Positions 17,932-24,608 of a stretch of 64,000 bases of DNA are shown piece by piece. The stretch is from sequence record KX397371.1, one strand, 5' to 3'. How positions within the stretch are numbered: the stretch's first letter is position 1; the number at the start of each line of letters is the position of its first letter. Made by a program: the position numbers and the translations under genes. Below the pieces are notes generated by a model. It ran no database searches. It was not told where the DNA came from and worked only from the letters and a program-made list of their open reading frames with translations.

Positions 17932-18360
17932 ATGAATACACTGTCTTTCGAAGCGGGTAAAGGGTTAAGCGTTAACGGACATCTGGTACCGGACACCAAC
18001 AACCACCATTTTGAAAAGCTCTACCGTCGTATCGGGGTAGGGCGTAAGGTCAACCTGAAAATCACCAACGAGATTGCCCTCAATGGCAACGTGGCGGCTT
18101 TAGGTCCGATGTATGGCTTCCGTCCAAGCCAAGATGCAGCAGCTGCCCTGATGCAGCACGGTGAGTTTAGCAGCGGTGTGTACGCGTTCCGTTTACTCGG
18201 TTCGCTGCGGCGGGTGTCGAACAAACACGTTGGTCAGGGCATGACACCGACCGTTTTACAGAGCGGTGAGATTATTGTCCTCGTACATTCCAATCACGAA
18301 TATAAGTCGGGTTTGGATTTCATGATTAGCTATTCCGAAGTGGAGAGTGCAGATGTCTGA
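17932..18360 (+). CDS. Hypothetical protein, possibly degenerate trimeric dUTPase fold
   Basis: AAGGA RBS; SGVYAF…SNKHVG..MTPTVLQSGEIIVLVHS loosely tracks dUTPase motifs 2-4 without the catalytic residues. Confidence 0.35.
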   Translation: MNTLSFEAGKGLSVNGHLVPDTNNHHFEKLYRRIGVGRKVNLKITNEIALNGNVAALGPMYGFRPSQDAAAALMQHGEFSSGVYAFRLLGSLRRVSNKHVGQGMTPTVLQSGEIIVLVHSNHEYKSGLDFMISYSEVESADV

Positions 18361-19237
18361 TAGAACTTACCCCGTCTTAAAGAACTTTGAACGTGTCGAT
18401 GCGTGGAACAACGATTCCGACATTTATCGTCACGGTAATGTTCATCAGCAGTCTCTGAAAATGTATCGCCATCTTGGTGAGCTGTGTGAGGGTGTCCAGA
18501 AAATGAAACAGCTGGACGTGGCCTCCGCAATGGGCAAGTTTGTGGTGGCATTGGTCGGCGTGGCGTCCTTTGCAGGGGTTGACGCAGAGGAGCTGGATGA
18601 GCTTTACAGCTACGCGGGCAGAAAAGCTACTCCGTGTACCCCAGCGCAAGCTGCGTGCAATCTGGTGCGTTCTACGACCTCTATGGTTAACGATATCAAC
18701 CAGTGGTTGTCTCCTGCTGGTACTCAGATGGCCAGAGCGATTGCAACGTCCTCTATCTGCGAAGTTTTCTGTTTACTGAAACAGAACGCGTCCCTCAATG
18801 CTATCGTGTTAGACCGCACCATTGAGAACGCCACGAACGTGCTCTGTGCGAAGAAAGGCAAAATGGATGAGTTCGGTTTGTTCCATGCAGAAGAAACCAC
18901 CATTGCCACCTCCAGAACCGGTTTTGTCCATCGCGGTGTGGGCGAGTGGATTAAATTGGCCATCAATCGAGATTTGGAAGGTCGCTTCGCAGAGCTGACC
19001 TCGCAGTTGCAGTTCGAATCGAACAGCGGTGAAGTCAGGCTGCGGGTTGAGGAGTCGATGAACAGCCACCTCGAGTTTACTTTGACCAAACATATCCGCA
19101 TGAAGCCTACTGTTAAACATCTTCTTAATGACCTTACCCCGGCAGTCGTGGTGACGCAAGAAGGTGATCGTCTGGAAGTTACGTCTAACAGCGATCTGCA
19201 AACGTTGTTCACTGAATTGGAAAAGGTAACCGAATAA
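18353..19237 (+). CDS. Degenerate MazG-like protein (paralog of 22386-23219) with extra C-terminal domain
   Basis: W…[21 protein letters not shown]…[12 protein letters not shown]…[15 protein letters not shown] aligns with the intact copy, but the acidic ligands are mostly replaced. Confidence 0.6.
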
Positions 19238-20298
19238 TGAAACAGTATTTGGAATTGATGCACACCGTGTTGAACGAAGGTCACGAGAAAGCTGACCGTA
19301 CCGGCACGGGCACCATCTCTATTTTCGGGCATCAGATGCGTTTTGACCTGCGCAAAGGGTTCCCGCTGGTCACCACCAAAAAGCTGCATCTGCGCTCTAT
19401 CATTCATGAGCTGTTGTGGTTTTTGCAGGGCGACACCAACATCCAGTATCTGAAAGACAACGGCGTAAGTATCTGGAATGAATGGTCGGATGAAAATGGC
19501 GACCTTGGCCCTGTGTACGGACACCAGTGGCGCGAATGGGCAGATGTCAAACTCGTCAGTCACTGGGACGAAGCGTCCAAGAAAGTGTTGTACGATCGTG
19601 GTTATCAGTTCAGCGGGGCTATCAATCGTGATGACCCATCTAAAACGCTGGCGGTGCTTACTAAGCGATTTGACCAAATCCAAACGGTTATTGACCAGTT
19701 GAGAAACGACCCGGACAACCGTCGCATCATTGTCAGTGCATGGAACGTGGGGGATTTGGACGACATGGCGTTAGCGCCGTGCCATTCCTTCTTCCAGTTC
19801 TACTCCCGCCCGATGATGGGCAAAGAGCTGGACGTGTATCTGGCGGAGTACCTTAAAACCGATGCGCGTTTGGCAGCGAAACACGCCGAACAGGTTGCCC
19901 TTTGTGAAGCTGACCCGCAAGGGGATCACGTTAGCTCGCACATGTTCTGCCTGACCAACGATATACCGACGCGTGTACTGTCCTGTCAGCTTTACCAGCG
20001 CAGCGCAGACGTCTTCCTCGGCGTCCCGTTCAACATCGCATCTTACGCGTTGTTGGTTCACATGGTGGCACAACAAGTCAATATGGTGGCGGGTGATTTC
20101 GTCTGGACGGGTGGTGATACCCATCTGTACTCGAACCATCTGGAACAGGCCACGTTGCAGCTCTCCCGTGTGCCGCATGACCTGCCCAAGCTCGTCATCA
20201 AACGTAAGCCCGATTCTATCTTCGACTATAAGTTCGAAGATTTTGAAATCGTCGGTTATGAATCACATCCAGCGATTAAGGCCCCGGTTGCTATTTAA
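19237..20298 (+). CDS. thyA: Thymidylate synthase
   Basis: DRTGTGT, LAPCH (catalytic Cys), [28 protein letters not shown]; two insertions relative to E. coli ThyA. Confidence 0.97.
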
Positions 20299-20307
20299 GG
20301 AGCGTGT

Positions 20308-20808
20308 ATGTCTGACAACATACTGAAGTTTCCCGGTAAGCCTAATCCTAACCCTATCACCGTGACGCCCCATGAACACCGCGCCCATTTCCCCATTCAC
20401 AGCCGTGACGGGAAGGTGGGTTCGTTTACAGTACCGGTGGGTGATATGTATTGGTGGGCGGCGATTTACGAACAAGTGGCTGCGGCCAATCCGTTTTTCG
20501 AGAACGTCTTTTACTTTTACTCCGAACCTTACGGCTGGCAAAATCAATCCTACACGAAACGTAAAACATCGTGCGAATTGACGATTGACCGCCGAACCCT
20601 GATAGAGATATTGAAAGTGGTGTCTTATACGCACATTCTGTCTCTTGACGGTTACCTGAACGATGACGATTACGAGATAGTCCATGACAATGCCCTGATG
20701 GTGTTGGCTGACGATTTGGAAATCGATTATGCGATGGGGATCTTCATGTCCCCGACAACGAACCCTGACCGGTTCATCATTAATTTCGTGGAATGCCATA
20801 ATGACTGA
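20308..20808 (+). CDS. Hypothetical protein
   Basis: AAGGAG RBS, 166 aa. Confidence 0.65.
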   Translation: MSDNILKFPGKPNPNPITVTPHEHRAHFPIHSRDGKVGSFTVPVGDMYWWAAIYEQVAAANPFFENVFYFYSEPYGWQNQSYTKRKTSCELTIDRRTLIEILKVVSYTHILSLDGYLNDDDYEIVHDNALMVLADDLEIDYAMGIFMSPTTNPDRFIINFVECHND

Positions 20809-21676
20809 CAAACTCAATAACCTGTATTTCTTCTCTGACCGTTTCTACACCATGCCGGGTGACAACTACTCCTTCGGTATCGTTGCAGCAAAAGACACGG
20901 CCGAAGCCAAGTTGATGCTGGGCACCGAACTGGTTGATGGTCTGCCGCTGGGCACCACTAACACATCGGGTCAGATTCTGTGTGCGGAAGAAATCCGTCA
21001 CATCGATCCGCGCGCTGACAGTGTCGCCAAGACCGTGACCGCTGAGCTGTGGAAACTGAACGACGGTGTGGATGTTTCAGAGCGCGTGAAGTATCTGCGT
21101 GAAACCATTTCGAAAATGCAGGGTATTGACTGTAGCGCACTGGAAGTGGACTTCACCCGCTGTCTGCGTATTCCTGGCGGCTGCACCAGCACCGGCAGTG
21201 ACCTGTGGCGCATCATGGTGAAGCACCCAGACTTCCCACAAACTGTACCGATCATGCTGTCCGCACACGGCGACGGTTCAATCACCGGTAACGATGATGT
21301 GAACTTCACCAAACTCGGTGAAACCGAAGAGTACACCTACCACGAAAACGTGGATCGTGTGCTGACGCCTGAATGGCTCCTGCTGGACTTGTTGGAACAG
21401 CATGGCCTGACCCCAGAAGACTGGTACGTGATTGCCGGTACGGCGCGCGCAGCAGCCTATAGCGCTGCCCCGGTAGACGGCTGGGAAGAAGTGAACGAAG
21501 TGTATGGTCAGAATGAAAGTGCGCACGTCATCCGTTTCTGGCTGAACCCAGACTGGCAGAACCTGATTGTGGCGGCTGTGGCGAAAGTGGTTGAGTCCAT
21601 GCCAAAAGAGCCGCTGCCAGAAAACCTCGCCGACGAACTGGCGGGTTCCGAATCTGCGGACGAAGCCGCAGAGTAA
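20801..21676 (+). CDS. Hypothetical acidic protein
   Basis: Start re-placed at ATG 20801 (MTDKLNN…); strong C/T third-position codon bias suggests high expression. Confidence 0.65.
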   Translation: MTDKLNNLYFFSDRFYTMPGDNYSFGIVAAKDTAEAKLMLGTELVDGLPLGTTNTSGQILCAEEIRHIDPRADSVAKTVTAELWKLNDGVDVSERVKYLRETISKMQGIDCSALEVDFTRCLRIPGGCTSTGSDLWRIMVKHPDFPQTVPIMLSAHGDGSITGNDDVNFTKLGETEEYTYHENVDRVLTPEWLLLDLLEQHGLTPEDWYVIAGTARAAAYSAAPVDGWEEVNEVYGQNESAHVIRFWLNPDWQNLIVAAVAKVVESMPKEPLPENLADELAGSESADEAAE

Positions 21677-21698
21677 CTTAACTGAAAAGGTGAATAAA

Positions 21699-22151
21699 GT
21701 GTCTACGACTCTAATCAATTACGATTTAGTAGTGCAAGAACTTTCCAAGGGGTTGGTTGCCCTCGACAGCGAAACGGCGTTGCGTTGCAATATGCTTCCC
21801 CATATCGCGCTCAGTGAGTTCCGCACCATTCGTTATGGTGCCGGACGCCAGAACGGGGTAACCGAACATGCTTCAAAATTAGCTGCGGAGCATAATGGCC
21901 CAGCACTGGTTCTGACGCATGCGGTGTCGTTACGGGACGATTTCATGTTTCGTGTCGAAGGTAACTTTCCGGGTAAGGGCAACATCACTTCGTTATGTGG
22001 GTACTTCCCCGACAATTGGCGAGTTGAGAAGTTCAGTCTCGTTATTGTTGATGAAGCCGGTTTCTTCTTTAAGAAATTTGGCTACGATAAAATCTATCGC
22101 AGTCTGGCAACACAAACGACTGACGATGTTGTGATTCACCTGATTAACTGA
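21699..22151 (+). CDS. Small P-loop/ASCE NTPase-like protein
   Basis: AAGGTG RBS with GTG 21699; AGRQNGVT (RQxGxT Walker A-like) and LVIVDEAG (Walker B). Confidence 0.5.
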   Translation: MSTTLINYDLVVQELSKGLVALDSETALRCNMLPHIALSEFRTIRYGAGRQNGVTEHASKLAAEHNGPALVLTHAVSLRDDFMFRVEGNFPGKGNITSLCGYFPDNWRVEKFSLVIVDEAGFFFKKFGYDKIYRSLATQTTDDVVIHLIN

Positions 22152-22159
22152 GGTTTGTA

Positions 22160-22330
22160 ATGTCCCAAGTAGAAAAAGAGCAGCAAGTCATCACGCAAGC
22201 CGATACCACCACACTGGACGATTTGTTCGGTGGTGATATTCCGGGCGTGGATGAGAATGCGGTGGTTGAAGGCGGTGTCGATGCGGCGGCTGAAGACGAC
22301 AACTGTGCAGGCGGTGCCTGCAAAATTTAA
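22160..22330 (+). CDS. 56-aa acidic peptide ending in an NrdA-like redox tail (DDNCAGGACKI)
   Basis: Below the ORF-track cutoff. GAGGT RBS; manual translation MSQVEKEQQVITQADTTTLDDLFGGDIPGVDENAVVEGGVDAAAEDDNCAGGACKI*; followed directly by a terminator. Confidence 0.75.
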   Translation: MSQVEKEQQVITQADTTTLDDLFGGDIPGVDENAVVEGGVDAAAEDDNCAGGACKI

Positions 22331-22337
22331 CAAGAGC

Positions 22338-22370
22338 GGGTGTCCTTATGGACACCCCTATTTCATTTTT
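22338..22370 (+). terminator. Rho-independent terminator
   Basis: GGGTGTCC-TTAT-GGACACCC followed by a T-rich tract. Confidence 0.65.
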
Positions 22371-22385
22371 TAAGGACTATCAGAA

Positions 22386-23219
22386 ATGCAACAGACTTTT
22401 GAGTTACCGATTGAACACAAAGCCATCATCCTGAATAGCGCTATCTTAGATTTCGTCATGCCTCAGTTGGCGGCTGCCGGTAAACGGATGTCTCGCATTA
22501 CGCGTCTGGCACTCAGCAGTGAAGGCCCACAGACGCTGGTTAACGGTTTTACCTTTGAAGGTGAACCGGCAGAATTCCACGCGATGTTGCGTTATCACAC
22601 CGCGCTCGACTTCCACAAAGAGCCGGTCTACCATAACCGCATCGTCCCGCTGTACCGTGTGTCACAATGTGTGGCCAAAGTCATTGGCTGGTCAACTGAC
22701 CGCGGTATTCTGGAAAACGGCCGTTGGGACTCACAGGGTACGAAGCTGTATGAAGAAGACGGTGAAGCCGCAACTGGCGTGGGTAAAAACAAAAAGCGTC
22801 TGATCATCGACGGTATCGGTGATGCGCTGGTTGTACTCGTTAACGTACTGGAACTGACCAGTATTGATGCCGCAGAAATTGCGCACATTTATCAGCTGGT
22901 ACGTGACACCAAAACCGTGGTGGATAACCCGCACTACCATTTCCACAAAATGCGTAAGAACCTGACCGAAGTGGTCGATGTGGTTTATGAATGTGAAGCC
23001 ATCGATTCACCGAAGAAAGTGGAAATCGGTCGCTTAACGCACGATGAGCGTCAGCAGATGTTGGGTCATGCGCAGCAGGCAATCCATCATGCCAACCAAC
23101 TGGCACGCCATTACGATTACTCGCTGGATGAGTGCTTCTCTCTGGCGTGGGATGAAATCAAAGACCGTAAAGGTTTCCTGAACGCTGACGGTGTGTTCAT
23201 CAAAGAAGCCGACGCTTAA
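22386..23219 (+). CDS. mazG: MazG-like nucleotide pyrophosphohydrolase
   Basis: WSTDRGIL…QGTKLYEEDGE…IIDGIGDALVVL…LDECFSLAWDEIKDRKG…GVFIKE with acidic metal ligands intact. Confidence 0.8.
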   Translation: MQQTFELPIEHKAIILNSAILDFVMPQLAAAGKRMSRITRLALSSEGPQTLVNGFTFEGEPAEFHAMLRYHTALDFHKEPVYHNRIVPLYRVSQCVAKVIGWSTDRGILENGRWDSQGTKLYEEDGEAATGVGKNKKRLIIDGIGDALVVLVNVLELTSIDAAEIAHIYQLVRDTKTVVDNPHYHFHKMRKNLTEVVDVVYECEAIDSPKKVEIGRLTHDERQQMLGHAQQAIHHANQLARHYDYSLDECFSLAWDEIKDRKGFLNADGVFIKEADA

Positions 23220-23251
23220 TTCACGTCCACTAACAATGCAGGAGTAGGACA

Positions 23252-24106
23252 ATGGAATACCAATTATTTCTCATCACGAACGACTTTACCAAATCCTTTG
23301 TGGACGAGTCGTTTCATGCCACGGTAGTTGCGCCGACAGAGGCCGCTGCTCGTTGGATTGTTGCCCAGCAATGTACTGACCTTCCGATGAATGAAGTGCA
23401 GGCTGCGGTAGCTTTTGCAGTGGGTAAGATTGACGCCCCTGCCGAGGGAATAATTTCTTTTGAGTTCGGGAAACGTAATCGCTTCCCACTCGTTAACCTC
23501 GACGCCTACAAGCGCCGTGAAGAGTTCGTTGAAGTTGAGCTACACGGCGGGATACAACCGACGCACGATATTCATCCGCCGGTGCCGGGTGCGGTGGTCA
23601 AATGTTTCGCGAGCAAAGAGCATCCGCGAATCGTGTTGATCCGCAGCACACTCAAAACCAGCACGCCGACCCTCATTGAAGAAGTGGGTGTGACGAACGA
23701 AGCCACATCGGTTCAGCTTTACACTGTTCATTCGCCGTCGGCGTATGCCGAGGTGGCAAAAGGTGAAGTCTTCACCACTGAGTACATCAATCTGTTTGGT
23801 TGTGAAGATGTCCTGCTGTTCCGCACGCTCATCATTCGCAACACCGAGCTGGCGTATCAGGACAAGCGCACGGAAGGGTTATTGCAGGAACTGCAATCAT
23901 TCTTCACCGAAGGGGGCGATCGTAACAGCATGGATGTGGGTATCAGCTACTATCCGGGCCAGAAGTTGACCATTGCTGATCCCGCTAAGGTGGTACTGTG
24001 GGTCATGTCGTTACCGCAGGTCATCACCCTCGACCGGACGATTACGGAAGAGAGCCTCAAGCCGTTTGCAGGCACTAACTGCCACACCCTGAACGCGGGA
24101 GAGTAA
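23252..24106 (+). CDS. Hypothetical protein
   Basis: AGGAG/AGGA RBS, 284 aa. Confidence 0.65.
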   Translation: MEYQLFLITNDFTKSFVDESFHATVVAPTEAAARWIVAQQCTDLPMNEVQAAVAFAVGKIDAPAEGIISFEFGKRNRFPLVNLDAYKRREEFVEVELHGGIQPTHDIHPPVPGAVVKCFASKEHPRIVLIRSTLKTSTPTLIEEVGVTNEATSVQLYTVHSPSAYAEVAKGEVFTTEYINLFGCEDVLLFRTLIIRNTELAYQDKRTEGLLQELQSFFTEGGDRNSMDVGISYYPGQKLTIADPAKVVLWVMSLPQVITLDRTITEESLKPFAGTNCHTLNAGE

Positions 24107-24107
24107 T

Positions 24108-24608
24108 ATGTTTGATGTGGACGTCGTCCCCCAAGGGGACGAGTTCGCAGTACAGATAAACGGCGTCACCATCTGTGTCTGCGACGAACAACGGGCTAAC
24201 TTCTGGCGTTGCTGTACGGGCGCGGATAAAGTCTTCGTCAGCTGTGACGTCGGTGTGTCGTTTGGTGAAGAACCACTGCGGTTGTGTAAGTTCCGTATCA
24301 CTGAAACGGAAATGCGCACGTTCCTCGGACAGGTAGTCTACACCTACGGCCATCTCGACCATGAGAACCGTGTGGGTTGGGTAGAAATTGACCCGACTAT
24401 CATGCGGACGTTACGTCAGGACGCTGAGGAGATTGTTGAGTCACAAAGCATGTGGCTTGATGAGGATGACGTGTACCCGAAAGGGGTACCGTTTATCCTT
24501 ATCCATCCCGAACGCAACAGCCGTACTGGGGAAGCCTTTATTGAGCTGATGTTTATCGAAATGCCGGAGAACGATGATGTCGAAGAAAAAGAACCAGCTG
24601 ACTTTTAA
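24108..24608 (+). CDS. Hypothetical acidic protein
   Basis: GGAG RBS, coupled to the previous gene. Confidence 0.6.
   Translation: MFDVDVVPQGDEFAVQINGVTICVCDEQRANFWRCCTGADKVFVSCDVGVSFGEEPLRLCKFRITETEMRTFLGQVVYTYGHLDHENRVGWVEIDPTIMRTLRQDAEEIVESQSMWLDEDDVYPKGVPFILIHPERNSRTGEAFIELMFIEMPENDDVEEKEPADF

What the first reader, a model, noticed from the sequence alone, without database searches (positions are those of the whole stretch)
22160..22330. Free-standing mimic of the ribonucleotide reductase redox tail (…EDDNCAGGACKI)
Seen: an unannotated 56-aa acidic, likely disordered ORF with a good RBS, last in the thyA operon, ending DDNCAGGACKI. Known: E. coli class Ia NrdA ends …DDGCESGACKI, and this Cx4C pair shuttles electrons from thioredoxin/glutaredoxin to the active site on a flexible acidic tail. 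No RNR gene is in this window. Inference: a trans-acting redox shuttle that accelerates host or phage RNR turnover, or a decoy that captures Trx/Grx or blocks host NrdA.
Basis: partly seen in the sequence, partly recalled or inferred. Interest (0 to 1): 0.78.

Follow-up and report, generated by a model that had tools for sequence, protein, structure and literature searches.

The report
Free-standing ribonucleotide reductase redox tail
A giant Erwinia phage that has no ribonucleotide reductase of its own encodes a tiny disordered protein ending in the same cysteine-pair tail that this enzyme uses to recharge itself. The protein belongs to an undescribed family found in many phages and in Neisseria-like bacteria.

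Summary
The ORF is real. It lies at 22160-22330 (+), encodes 56 aa and is gp246 of Erwinia phage Parshik, annotated only as "hypothetical protein". It is acidic (net charge about -11.5) and predicted to be disordered.

Its last 13-15 residues match the extreme C-terminus of class Ia RNR alpha (NrdA). A family profile searched against the PDB returned almost only RNR alpha chains, each aligned to its last residue.

It belongs to an uncharacterised family (PHROG 14561 and relatives; no Pfam, NCBIfam or literature hit). In 65 of 76 members the Cx4C-K-I/L motif sits at the very C-terminus, and both cysteines are invariant. The family occurs in about 80 jumbo-phage records, several other phage lineages (mostly inside nucleotide-metabolism clusters) and Neisseriaceae chromosomes.

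The key comparative result comes from one phage lineage. Its NrdA keeps every catalytic residue but has lost its tail, and the gene directly upstream (a deoxyribonucleotidase) carries the tail module.

Parshik has no detectable NrdA/B/D/E/F, TrxA or NrdH. The best reading is a diffusible redox arm that host thioredoxin or glutaredoxin charges and that serves host NrdA. A decoy or inhibitor role is not excluded. Nothing here is experimental.

The parts
22160..22330 (+). gp246 ORF (56 aa plus stop), the free-standing tail protein
   Evidence: Member of PHROG 14561, E 5e-31. 100% identical to PARSHIK_246.
22150..22153 (+). GAGG Shine-Dalgarno-like motif, 6 nt upstream of the ATG; overlaps the stop codon of gp245
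   Evidence: read directly from the sequence
22160..22264 (+). N-terminal variable acidic half (residues 1-35). Carries the LDDLF...IPGVD motif shared by the jumbo-phage subfamily.
   Evidence: alignments; sequences; only AF2 element is helix 19-22
22265..22327 (+). Conserved family module (residues 36-56), VEGGVD-x4-DD-x-C-x-GGA-C-K-I. Nine residues of this module (E37, G39, V40, E45, D46, D47, G51, A53, I56) that were invariant among the closest 14 members vary in the wider set of 53 (four of them, G39, G51, A53 and V36, still at 90% or more).
   Evidence: invariant columns; pS 0.75 vs pN 0.17 over these codons
22283..22327 (+). Segment homologous to the extreme C-terminus of class Ia NrdA (about residues 42-56). 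Cys49 codon at 22304-22306, Cys54 codon at 22319-22321. Same register as E. coli C754/C759 (7 and 2 residues from the end).
22338..22371 (+). Terminator-like hairpin (8 bp, 6 GC, 4-nt loop) plus T-rich run directly after the stop codon
   Evidence: consensus match only
19237..20298 (+). Context: thymidylate synthase gp242 (353 aa, with insertion)
   Evidence: Pfam PF00303, E 2e-116; annotation
20801..21676 (+). Context: gp244, function unknown. Its homologue is fused in frame to the tail module in another jumbo phage (L028).
   Evidence: no PDB relative
21699..22151 (+). Context: gp245, function unknown, immediately upstream of gp246
22386..23219 (+). Context: MazG-like nucleotide pyrophosphohydrolase gp247, immediately downstream. 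A MazG-like enzyme is fused to the tail module in family member P0076.
   Evidence: PHROG 7855, E 2e-121; P0076 hits PHROG 671, E 2e-30
18353..19237 (+). Context: second MazG-like paralogue gp241, upstream of thyA
   Evidence: PHROG hits; annotation

Best explanation
gp246 is a free-standing copy of the flexible redox tail of class Ia ribonucleotide reductase alpha. It is a disordered, strongly acidic peptide. Its C-terminal Cys49-x4-Cys54-Lys-Ile is proposed to be reduced by host thioredoxin or glutaredoxin, and then to enter the active-site pocket of NrdA and reduce the disulfide left there after each turnover.

Parshik has no RNR and no thioredoxin-fold reductant that I could detect, so the client would be the host's NrdA. 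There the peptide would add a diffusible second arm working alongside the enzyme's own tail. This would raise or sustain dNDP output for replication of a 241-kb genome.

Shown: the homology and register of the tail; invariance of the Cys pair; strong purifying selection; constant C-terminal placement; frequent location in nucleotide-metabolism clusters; and a natural lineage in which the tail has left NrdA and sits on the neighbouring gene product.

Inferred: the redox cycling, the client enzyme in this phage, and the direction of the effect.
For: (1) A profile of 14 members searched against the PDB gave 13 hits. Twelve were class Ia RNR alpha, and all twelve aligned to their last residue. A family HMM hit 220 of 229 NrdAs, end-anchored over 13-15 residues.

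(2) 65 of 76 family members carry Cx4C-K-I/L at the very C-terminus, whatever lies N-terminal of it: nothing, a deoxyribonucleotidase, a MazG-like enzyme or a gp244 homologue.

(3) In L021/L022/L023 the gene order is DHFR | deoxyribonucleotidase with tail module | nrdA | nrdB. That NrdA ends right after ...NTRDGSGDQL. It has no Cys pair but keeps the equivalents of C225, N437, C439, E441, C462, Y730 and Y731. In contrast, 78 of 78 IMG/VR NrdA loci have their own Cys pair and no extra tail ORF within 10 kb.

(4) PDB 1qfn_B is a 25-residue E. coli R1 tail peptide. From my own knowledge, it was solved in a mixed disulfide with glutaredoxin-1. That would mean a free tail peptide is a competent Grx substrate.

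(5) With mouse RNR, a second reductant acting on the active site in parallel with the tail raised activity up to 3-fold, because the oxidised tail must leave to be re-reduced (PMC4078304).

(6) Gene neighbours are thyA and MazG here; dNMP kinase, thyA and dUTPase in roughly 60-kb phages; dUTPase in roughly 155-kb phages; MazG, TK and NrdD in Vibrio phage ICP2.

(7) Parshik and ICP2 lack class I RNR, TrxA and NrdH.
Against: No experiment bears on this family.

The host's NrdA already has its own tail (Erwinia NrdA ends ...QDDGCESGACKI), so the benefit of an extra arm is assumed. The phage tail differs from the host tail at the two residues after the first Cys.

The tail-less-NrdA case is a single lineage (three near-identical contigs). 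For two other tail-less NrdA lineages (L050; L049/L149) I found no tail gene within the DNA I could reach.

The family-specific VEGGVD block and the N-terminal motifs have no counterpart in NrdA and remain unexplained.

In one phage lineage the gene sits after terminase- and portal-like genes, not among nucleotide genes.

N. gonorrhoeae NrdA keeps its own tail (PMC11226230). In Neisseriaceae the free copy therefore probably does not replace a lost tail; I could not check this within one genome.
Confidence: 0.5

Rival explanations
1. Decoy or inhibitor. The peptide competes with the NrdA tail for thioredoxin or glutaredoxin, or sits in the alpha active-site pocket (which nucleotides and the tail share). 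Either would damp host RNR, in the manner of the small disordered yeast inhibitor Sml1.
For: The tail mimicry is the same as for the shuttle reading. The alpha tail and nucleotides compete for one pocket (PMC11903788). Sml1 is described as blocking R1 regeneration (PMC6382339). Phages carrying the ORF also carry salvage-type enzymes such as thyA, TK, dNMP kinase and dUTPase. Free tail ORFs and tailed NrdA were never seen together in the same stretch of phage DNA (within 10 kb).
Against: A reduced Cys pair that reaches the active site would reduce it, which is productive, not blocking. The lineage with a tail-less NrdA next to a tail-bearing gene only makes sense if the module supports turnover. 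A phage with a 241-kb genome and no RNR depends on host dNDP synthesis. No similarity to Sml1 or any other inhibitor family was found (Pfam: 0 hits).
Confidence: 0.2
2. Address tag or adaptor. The tail module is mainly a docking peptide that brings cargo (deoxyribonucleotidase, MazG-like enzyme, gp244) to RNR alpha or to Trx/Grx. This would assemble a dNTP-metabolising complex. The free-standing form would be a two-ended adaptor whose N-terminal motif binds a phage partner.
For: Three independent fusions exist: to a nucleotide-catabolic enzyme (P0052), to a MazG-like enzyme (P0076) and to a gp244 homologue (L028). The N-terminal motifs are subfamily-specific and conserved: IPGLDPDA in phages, LDNLDxLLxxFDG in bacteria.
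Against: Both cysteines are invariant, which a pure docking role would not require. Most members (41 of 65 are 40-59 aa) have no cargo. No partner is identified.
Confidence: 0.12
3. A function unrelated to RNR: a generic thiol peptide (metal binding, redox buffering, or a substrate for another Trx-dependent enzyme) whose resemblance to the NrdA tail reflects descent or convergence without a shared client.
For: The shared segment is short, 13-15 residues. Bacterial copies are not linked to nrdAB. In one phage lineage the gene lies in the structural module. In ICP2 the neighbouring enzyme is the class III NrdD; from my own knowledge it uses formate rather than a thiol tail, and its finger loop reads MGCR.
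Against: The match is specific and end-anchored to class Ia alpha only; E. coli NrdE ends differently. The neighbourhood is recurrently nucleotide-metabolic across unrelated phages. There is direct adjacency to a tail-less NrdA.
Confidence: 0.1
4. Not a real gene: a chance ORF or a decayed fragment of nrdA.
For: It is short and of low complexity.
Against: pN is far below pS across 17 loci. There are 66 representative clusters at E <= 1e-3. Synteny is conserved in about 80 phage records. No NrdA-like sequence lies upstream of the tail.
Confidence: 0.01

Closest known systems
C-terminal redox tail of class Ia RNR alpha (NrdA; E. coli C754/C759)
   Same: Same motif, same spacing (Cx4C), same distance from the C-terminus and same terminal K-I. 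Acidic residues lie before the first Cys and the context is disordered.
   Different: Not attached to the catalytic barrel. It is a 56-aa protein of its own with a family-specific VEGGVD block and N-terminal motifs absent from NrdA. It is encoded by a phage with no RNR.
Synthetic E. coli R1 tail peptide bound to glutaredoxin-1 (PDB 1qfn)
   Same: A free peptide with the tail sequence (25 residues, R1 737-761). That it forms a specific complex with Grx1 is from my own knowledge.
   Different: A laboratory fragment, not a natural gene product.
Glutaredoxin domain fused to NrdB in Facklamia ignava (PMC6187632)
   Same: A natural rearrangement of the RNR electron relay, in which one relay component has moved to a different polypeptide.
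   Different: There a reductant is fused onto beta. Here the acceptor tail is detached from alpha.
Sml1 / Spd1-type small disordered RNR regulators of yeasts
   Same: Small, disordered proteins that interfere with the step in which the R1 C-terminus regenerates the active site (PMC6382339).
   Different: No sequence relation (Pfam: none). Sml1 has no redox Cys pair and is an inhibitor. Eukaryotic.
R2 C-terminal peptides that inhibit RNR by competing for the beta-binding cleft (own knowledge)
   Same: A short peptide mimic of an RNR subunit tail.
   Different: It mimics beta, not alpha. The N-terminal half of gp246 gave no NrdB hit in the PDB profile search.

Membership tests
Class Ia RNR alpha C-terminal redox tail | Two cysteines spaced Cx4C, 7 and 2 residues from the C-terminus, followed by K-I/L | tested here: met
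   C49 and C54 of 56. E. coli has C754 and C759 of 761.
Class Ia RNR alpha C-terminal redox tail | Acidic, flexible, disordered segment | tested here: met
   Net charge about -11.5. pLDDT 61, pTM 0.18.
Class Ia RNR alpha C-terminal redox tail | Covalently part of the alpha subunit (ATP-cone, Ribonuc_red_lgN/lgC) | tested here: not met
   56-aa protein with no Pfam domain. No NrdA anywhere in the genome.
Class Ia RNR alpha C-terminal redox tail | Reduced by Trx/Grx and reduces the active-site C225/C462 pair | not testable with these tools
   Inference only. Indirect support from PDB 1qfn and from the tail-less NrdA next to a tail-bearing gene.
PHROG 14561 (with 24014, 38753, 20277): uncharacterised phage small proteins | Profile match over the whole family model | tested here: met
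   E 5.3e-31, residues 7-56 on profile positions 2-51 of 51.
Thioredoxin-fold reductants (Trx, Grx, NrdH) | CxxC within a thioredoxin fold | tested here: not met
   Cx4C, no fold predicted. No Pfam or NCBIfam hit.
Sml1-type RNR inhibitors | Sequence membership in the family | tested here: not met
   0 Pfam families at E <= 0.1.
RiPP or bacteriocin precursor | Adjacent maturation enzyme or transporter; variable core after a conserved leader | tested here: not met
   Neighbours are nucleotide enzymes or housekeeping genes. The conserved part is the C-terminus, not a leader.
Known anti-phage defence or counter-defence proteins (PADLOC) | Profile match | tested here: not met
   0 hits for 7 members.

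The most novel reading that the evidence does not exclude
Phages, and Neisseriaceae, encode diffusible 'spare tails' for class Ia RNR. The electron-relay arm of the enzyme would then be a mobile, exchangeable module. It can leave alpha altogether, giving tail-less NrdAs served in trans. RNR-less phages can also deploy it to take over the recharge step of the host enzyme and drive dNTP supply.
Probability: 0.4. Interest if true: 0.85.

Novelty: new variant of a known kind. Interest (0 to 1): 0.74.

Why it matters
The re-reduction half of the RNR cycle is the least understood part of a textbook enzyme. A recent survey states that class I RNRs almost exclusively carry the double-cysteine tail on alpha (PMC9669993).

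Two things would be new: a natural family of detached tails, and natural alpha subunits that have lost theirs. Together they would show that the relay can work between separate polypeptides. They would also provide small natural probes for how the tail finds the active site and its reductant.

For phage biology it would be a new kind of auxiliary metabolic gene. The phage would bring only the 56-residue part that limits host enzyme recycling, not an enzyme. The gene is conserved in a large clade of jumbo phages used as models (SPN3US) and in the well-studied Vibrio cholerae phage ICP2.

Tried and rejected
- A single-sequence phmmer search against the PDB found no RNR; only the family profile did.
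- Pfam, NCBIfam and PADLOC gave nothing.
- A literature search for the terminal motif and several RNR-tail term sets found no description of the family. A search for SPN3US gp234 returned one unrelated paper. The SPN3US infection-proteome paper (PMC6384053) is not held, and neither is Zhang et al. 2007.
- I considered that the N-terminal half mimics the NrdB C-terminal alpha-binding tail. This is not supported: no NrdB chain appeared in the PDB profile search at E <= 10, and the order of the similar stretches differs from NrdB.
- I considered that gp245 is a thymidine kinase. Only 17 columns around a Walker-B-like stretch align (hhalign probability 7.9%). Profiles of gp244 and gp245 have no PDB relative.
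- A search for relatives of the deoxyribonucleotidase-tail fusion in IMG/VR found none.
- The genome-contig scan used narrow patterns and returned only four Neisseria loci, so the bacterial distribution is a lower bound.
- I could not fetch NrdA from a Neisseriaceae genome that carries the small ORF.
- I could not find a tail gene for the bacterial tail-less NrdA lineage or on the 5.6-kb phage contig L050.
- Salmonella phage Arash was fetched as a possible source of a phage nrdA, but it has none near thyA.

Full report
**What the window is.** Bases 19200-24200 are 100% identical to Erwinia phage vB_EamM_Parshik (KX397371.1; Machinavirus, a 241-kb SPN3US-like jumbo phage). The window corresponds to record positions 177051-241050.

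**The observation.**
- A GAGG motif lies 6 nt before the ATG. A GC-rich 8-bp hairpin with a T-rich run follows the stop codon.
- The protein has 13 acidic and 2 basic residues, pI 4.05.
- AlphaFold2 with a 53-sequence alignment gives pLDDT 61 and pTM 0.18, with no structure beyond a 4-residue helix. This is consistent with intrinsic disorder.

**Is it a real gene?** Yes.
- It matches PHROG 14561 (E 5e-31) and three further PHROGs of unknown function. All four matches reach the family model's last position.
- tblastn finds it in about 80 phage records. All strong hits are enterobacterial jumbo phages: Machinavirus, SPN3US-like Seoulvirus, CR5, Asesino, phiEaH2, Alexandravirus.
- The gene order gp243-gp244-gp245-tail ORF-MazG is conserved.
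- A profile search of 1.84 billion representative proteins gave 66 hits at E <= 1e-3. Nearly all are proteins of 39-120 aa.
- 65 of 76 family members end in Cx4C-K-I/L. The rest look truncated or frameshifted.
- C49, G52, C54 and K55 are invariant in 53 aligned members.
- Over the last 22 codons of 17 phage and bacterial loci, synonymous differences are saturated (mean pS 0.75) while non-synonymous ones are rare (pN 0.17).

**Is it like the NrdA tail?** Yes, and specifically so.
- The single sequence finds nothing in the PDB. A profile of 14 members returns 13 chains, 12 of them class Ia RNR alpha, each aligned to its last residue.
- The N. gonorrhoeae enzyme (7mdi; identified in PMC11226230) ends ...DDGCAGGACKI. 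E. coli R1 ends ...DDGCESGACKI.
- I fetched E. coli K-12 nrdAB from a genome record and confirmed the register. C754/C759 of 761 correspond to C49/C54 of 56.
- A family HMM hits 220 of 229 full-length NrdAs, always end-anchored, over the last 13-15 residues only.
- Erwinia NrdAs end ...QDDGCESGACKI.
- E. coli class Ib NrdE ends differently, so the likeness is to class Ia.
- The VEGGVD block and the N-terminal motifs of the family have no counterpart in NrdA.

**Where else the module occurs.** Named bacterial members are all Neisseriaceae: Neisseria spp., N. leonii, Alysiella crassa. They sit in chromosomal contexts unlinked to nrdAB. The phage contexts are:

| Lineage | Neighbourhood of the tail ORF |
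|---|---|
| Parshik and roughly 224-kb jumbo phages | thyA ... tail, then MazG |
| Roughly 60-kb phages | tail, dNMP kinase, thyA, dUTPase |
| Roughly 155-kb phages | dUTPase, then tail |
| Alexandravirus | two genes after dCMP deaminase |
| Vibrio phage ICP2 (unannotated right end) | MazG-like, thymidine kinase, a 70-aa zinc-ribbon-like protein ending ...EDSDCAGGACKI, class III NrdD |
| L131/L132 (exception) | follows terminase- and portal-like genes |

Three fusions exist, and in all of them the module stays at the extreme C-terminus:
- a 5'-3' deoxyribonucleotidase (P0052);
- a MazG-like pyrophosphohydrolase (P0076);
- a gp244 homologue in another jumbo phage (L028).

**The informative case.** P0052 is encoded directly upstream of nrdA-nrdB, next to DHFR, on three near-identical phage-like contigs.
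- That NrdA (1008 aa, with an intein) stops right after ...YYHNTRDGSGDQL, so it has no Cys pair. It keeps the equivalents of C225, N437, C439, E441, C462, Y730 and Y731.
- The only tail motif on the contig in any frame is the one on P0052.
- Among 120 close relatives of this NrdA, 113 have the Cys pair and 7 lack it. The 7 are this phage, a second intein-bearing phage NrdA on a 5.6-kb contig, and five clusters of a bacterial NrdA in which the two Cys positions read K and A.
- Among 78 NrdA loci from IMG/VR, all have a Cys pair and none has an extra tail ORF within 10 kb.
- A published survey states that class I RNRs almost exclusively carry the tail on alpha (PMC9669993).
- An enzyme that must still form the active-site disulfide, has lost its own tail and sits next to a gene that carries one is most simply served in trans.

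**What this phage lacks.** No RNR is annotated in the 241-kb genome. tblastn with E. coli NrdA, NrdB, NrdE, NrdF, NrdH, NrdI and TrxA, and with ICP2 NrdD, finds nothing credible. ICP2 likewise lacks class I RNR, TrxA and NrdH. Class II RNR and Grx1 were not used as queries.

**Mechanism proposed.** Host Trx or Grx reduces the Cys pair. The reduced tail enters the NrdA pocket and reduces the active-site disulfide. The oxidised peptide then leaves.
- From my own knowledge, a 25-residue R1 tail peptide was solved bound to Grx1; the tool shows only the peptide chain, 1qfn_B.
- The alpha tail and nucleotides share one pocket (PMC11903788).
- With mouse RNR, adding a second reductant that acts while the tail is away raised activity up to 3-fold (PMC4078304).
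- A diffusible arm could therefore lift the recycling limit of host NrdA.
- This is inference. The same mimicry could give a decoy or plug, as with Sml1 (PMC6382339), or an address tag for partner enzymes.
- I rate the shuttle at about 0.5, the decoy at 0.2, the tag at 0.12, an unrelated thiol role at 0.1 and an artefact at 0.01. The remainder is left unassigned, for explanations I have not considered.

**Comparison with what is known.** The module works like the NrdA tail but is not NrdA, because the defining attachment to the catalytic subunit is absent. The nearest precedent for moving a relay component between polypeptides is the Grx domain fused to NrdB in Facklamia (PMC6187632). No database family name and no paper describes a detached tail. 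I class it as a new variant of a known kind.

**Limits.**
- Everything is comparative.
- The tail-less NrdA with a neighbouring tail is one lineage.
- The bacterial distribution is a lower bound, because the scan used narrow patterns.
- Co-occurrence with NrdA in a single Neisseriaceae genome was not checked.
- Expression data for SPN3US gp234 could not be read.

Noticed in passing
L150:1920-5045 (Vibrio phage ICP2_2013_A_Haiti NC_024791.1, record about 46.4-49.5 kb): The last ~5.7 kb of this RefSeq record has no annotated genes. It nevertheless encodes a MazG-like protein, a thymidine kinase, a 70-aa zinc-ribbon-like protein with the NrdA-type tail, and a class III NrdD (Pfam NRDD, E 3e-153).
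   Followed up: yes
L049:932-3208 and L149:934-3210 (bacterial metagenome contigs): A chromosomal class Ia NrdA (758 aa, followed by nrdB and a yfaE-like ferredoxin) keeps all catalytic residues. At the two tail Cys positions it has K and A. Five 90%-identity clusters share this. How this enzyme is re-reduced is unknown.
   Followed up: partly
L028:9110-10180 (IMGVR_UViG_3300011862_000001, 237-kb jumbo phage): The gp244 homologue runs in frame into the tail module, and gp245 is absent. This is a natural fusion linking the unknown protein gp244 to the tail.
   Followed up: partly
window 19237-20298: The phage thymidylate synthase is 353 aa, roughly 90 aa longer than the 266-position Pfam model. 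The Pfam match falls in two stretches, and E. coli thyA aligns over only 72% of it, in three pieces. An insertion is therefore likely.
   Followed up: no
window 18353-19237 and 22386-23219: Two MazG-like pyrophosphohydrolase paralogues bracket the thyA-to-gp246 block.
   Followed up: partly
window 21699-22151: gp245 has a Walker-B-like hhhhDEAGFF stretch reminiscent of thymidine kinase, but the comparison is not significant (hhalign probability 7.9%). It has no Pfam or PDB relative.
   Followed up: yes
L002:4443-4935 (Erwinia phage pEa_SNUABM_10): An extra ~330-nt ORF sits between gp245 and the tail ORF. The tail ORF has a different N-terminus there.
   Followed up: no
L131:10001-10162, L132:5804-5965: In this phage lineage the tail ORF (ending ...CVGGACKL) lies directly after terminase- and portal-like genes instead of among nucleotide-metabolism genes.
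   Followed up: partly
L005:38462-40698 (Parshik record 138462-140698, outside the window): Two adjacent genes annotated as radical SAM proteins (gp173, gp174) sit next to small ORFs. I did not examine them. No link to gp246 was seen.
   Followed up: no
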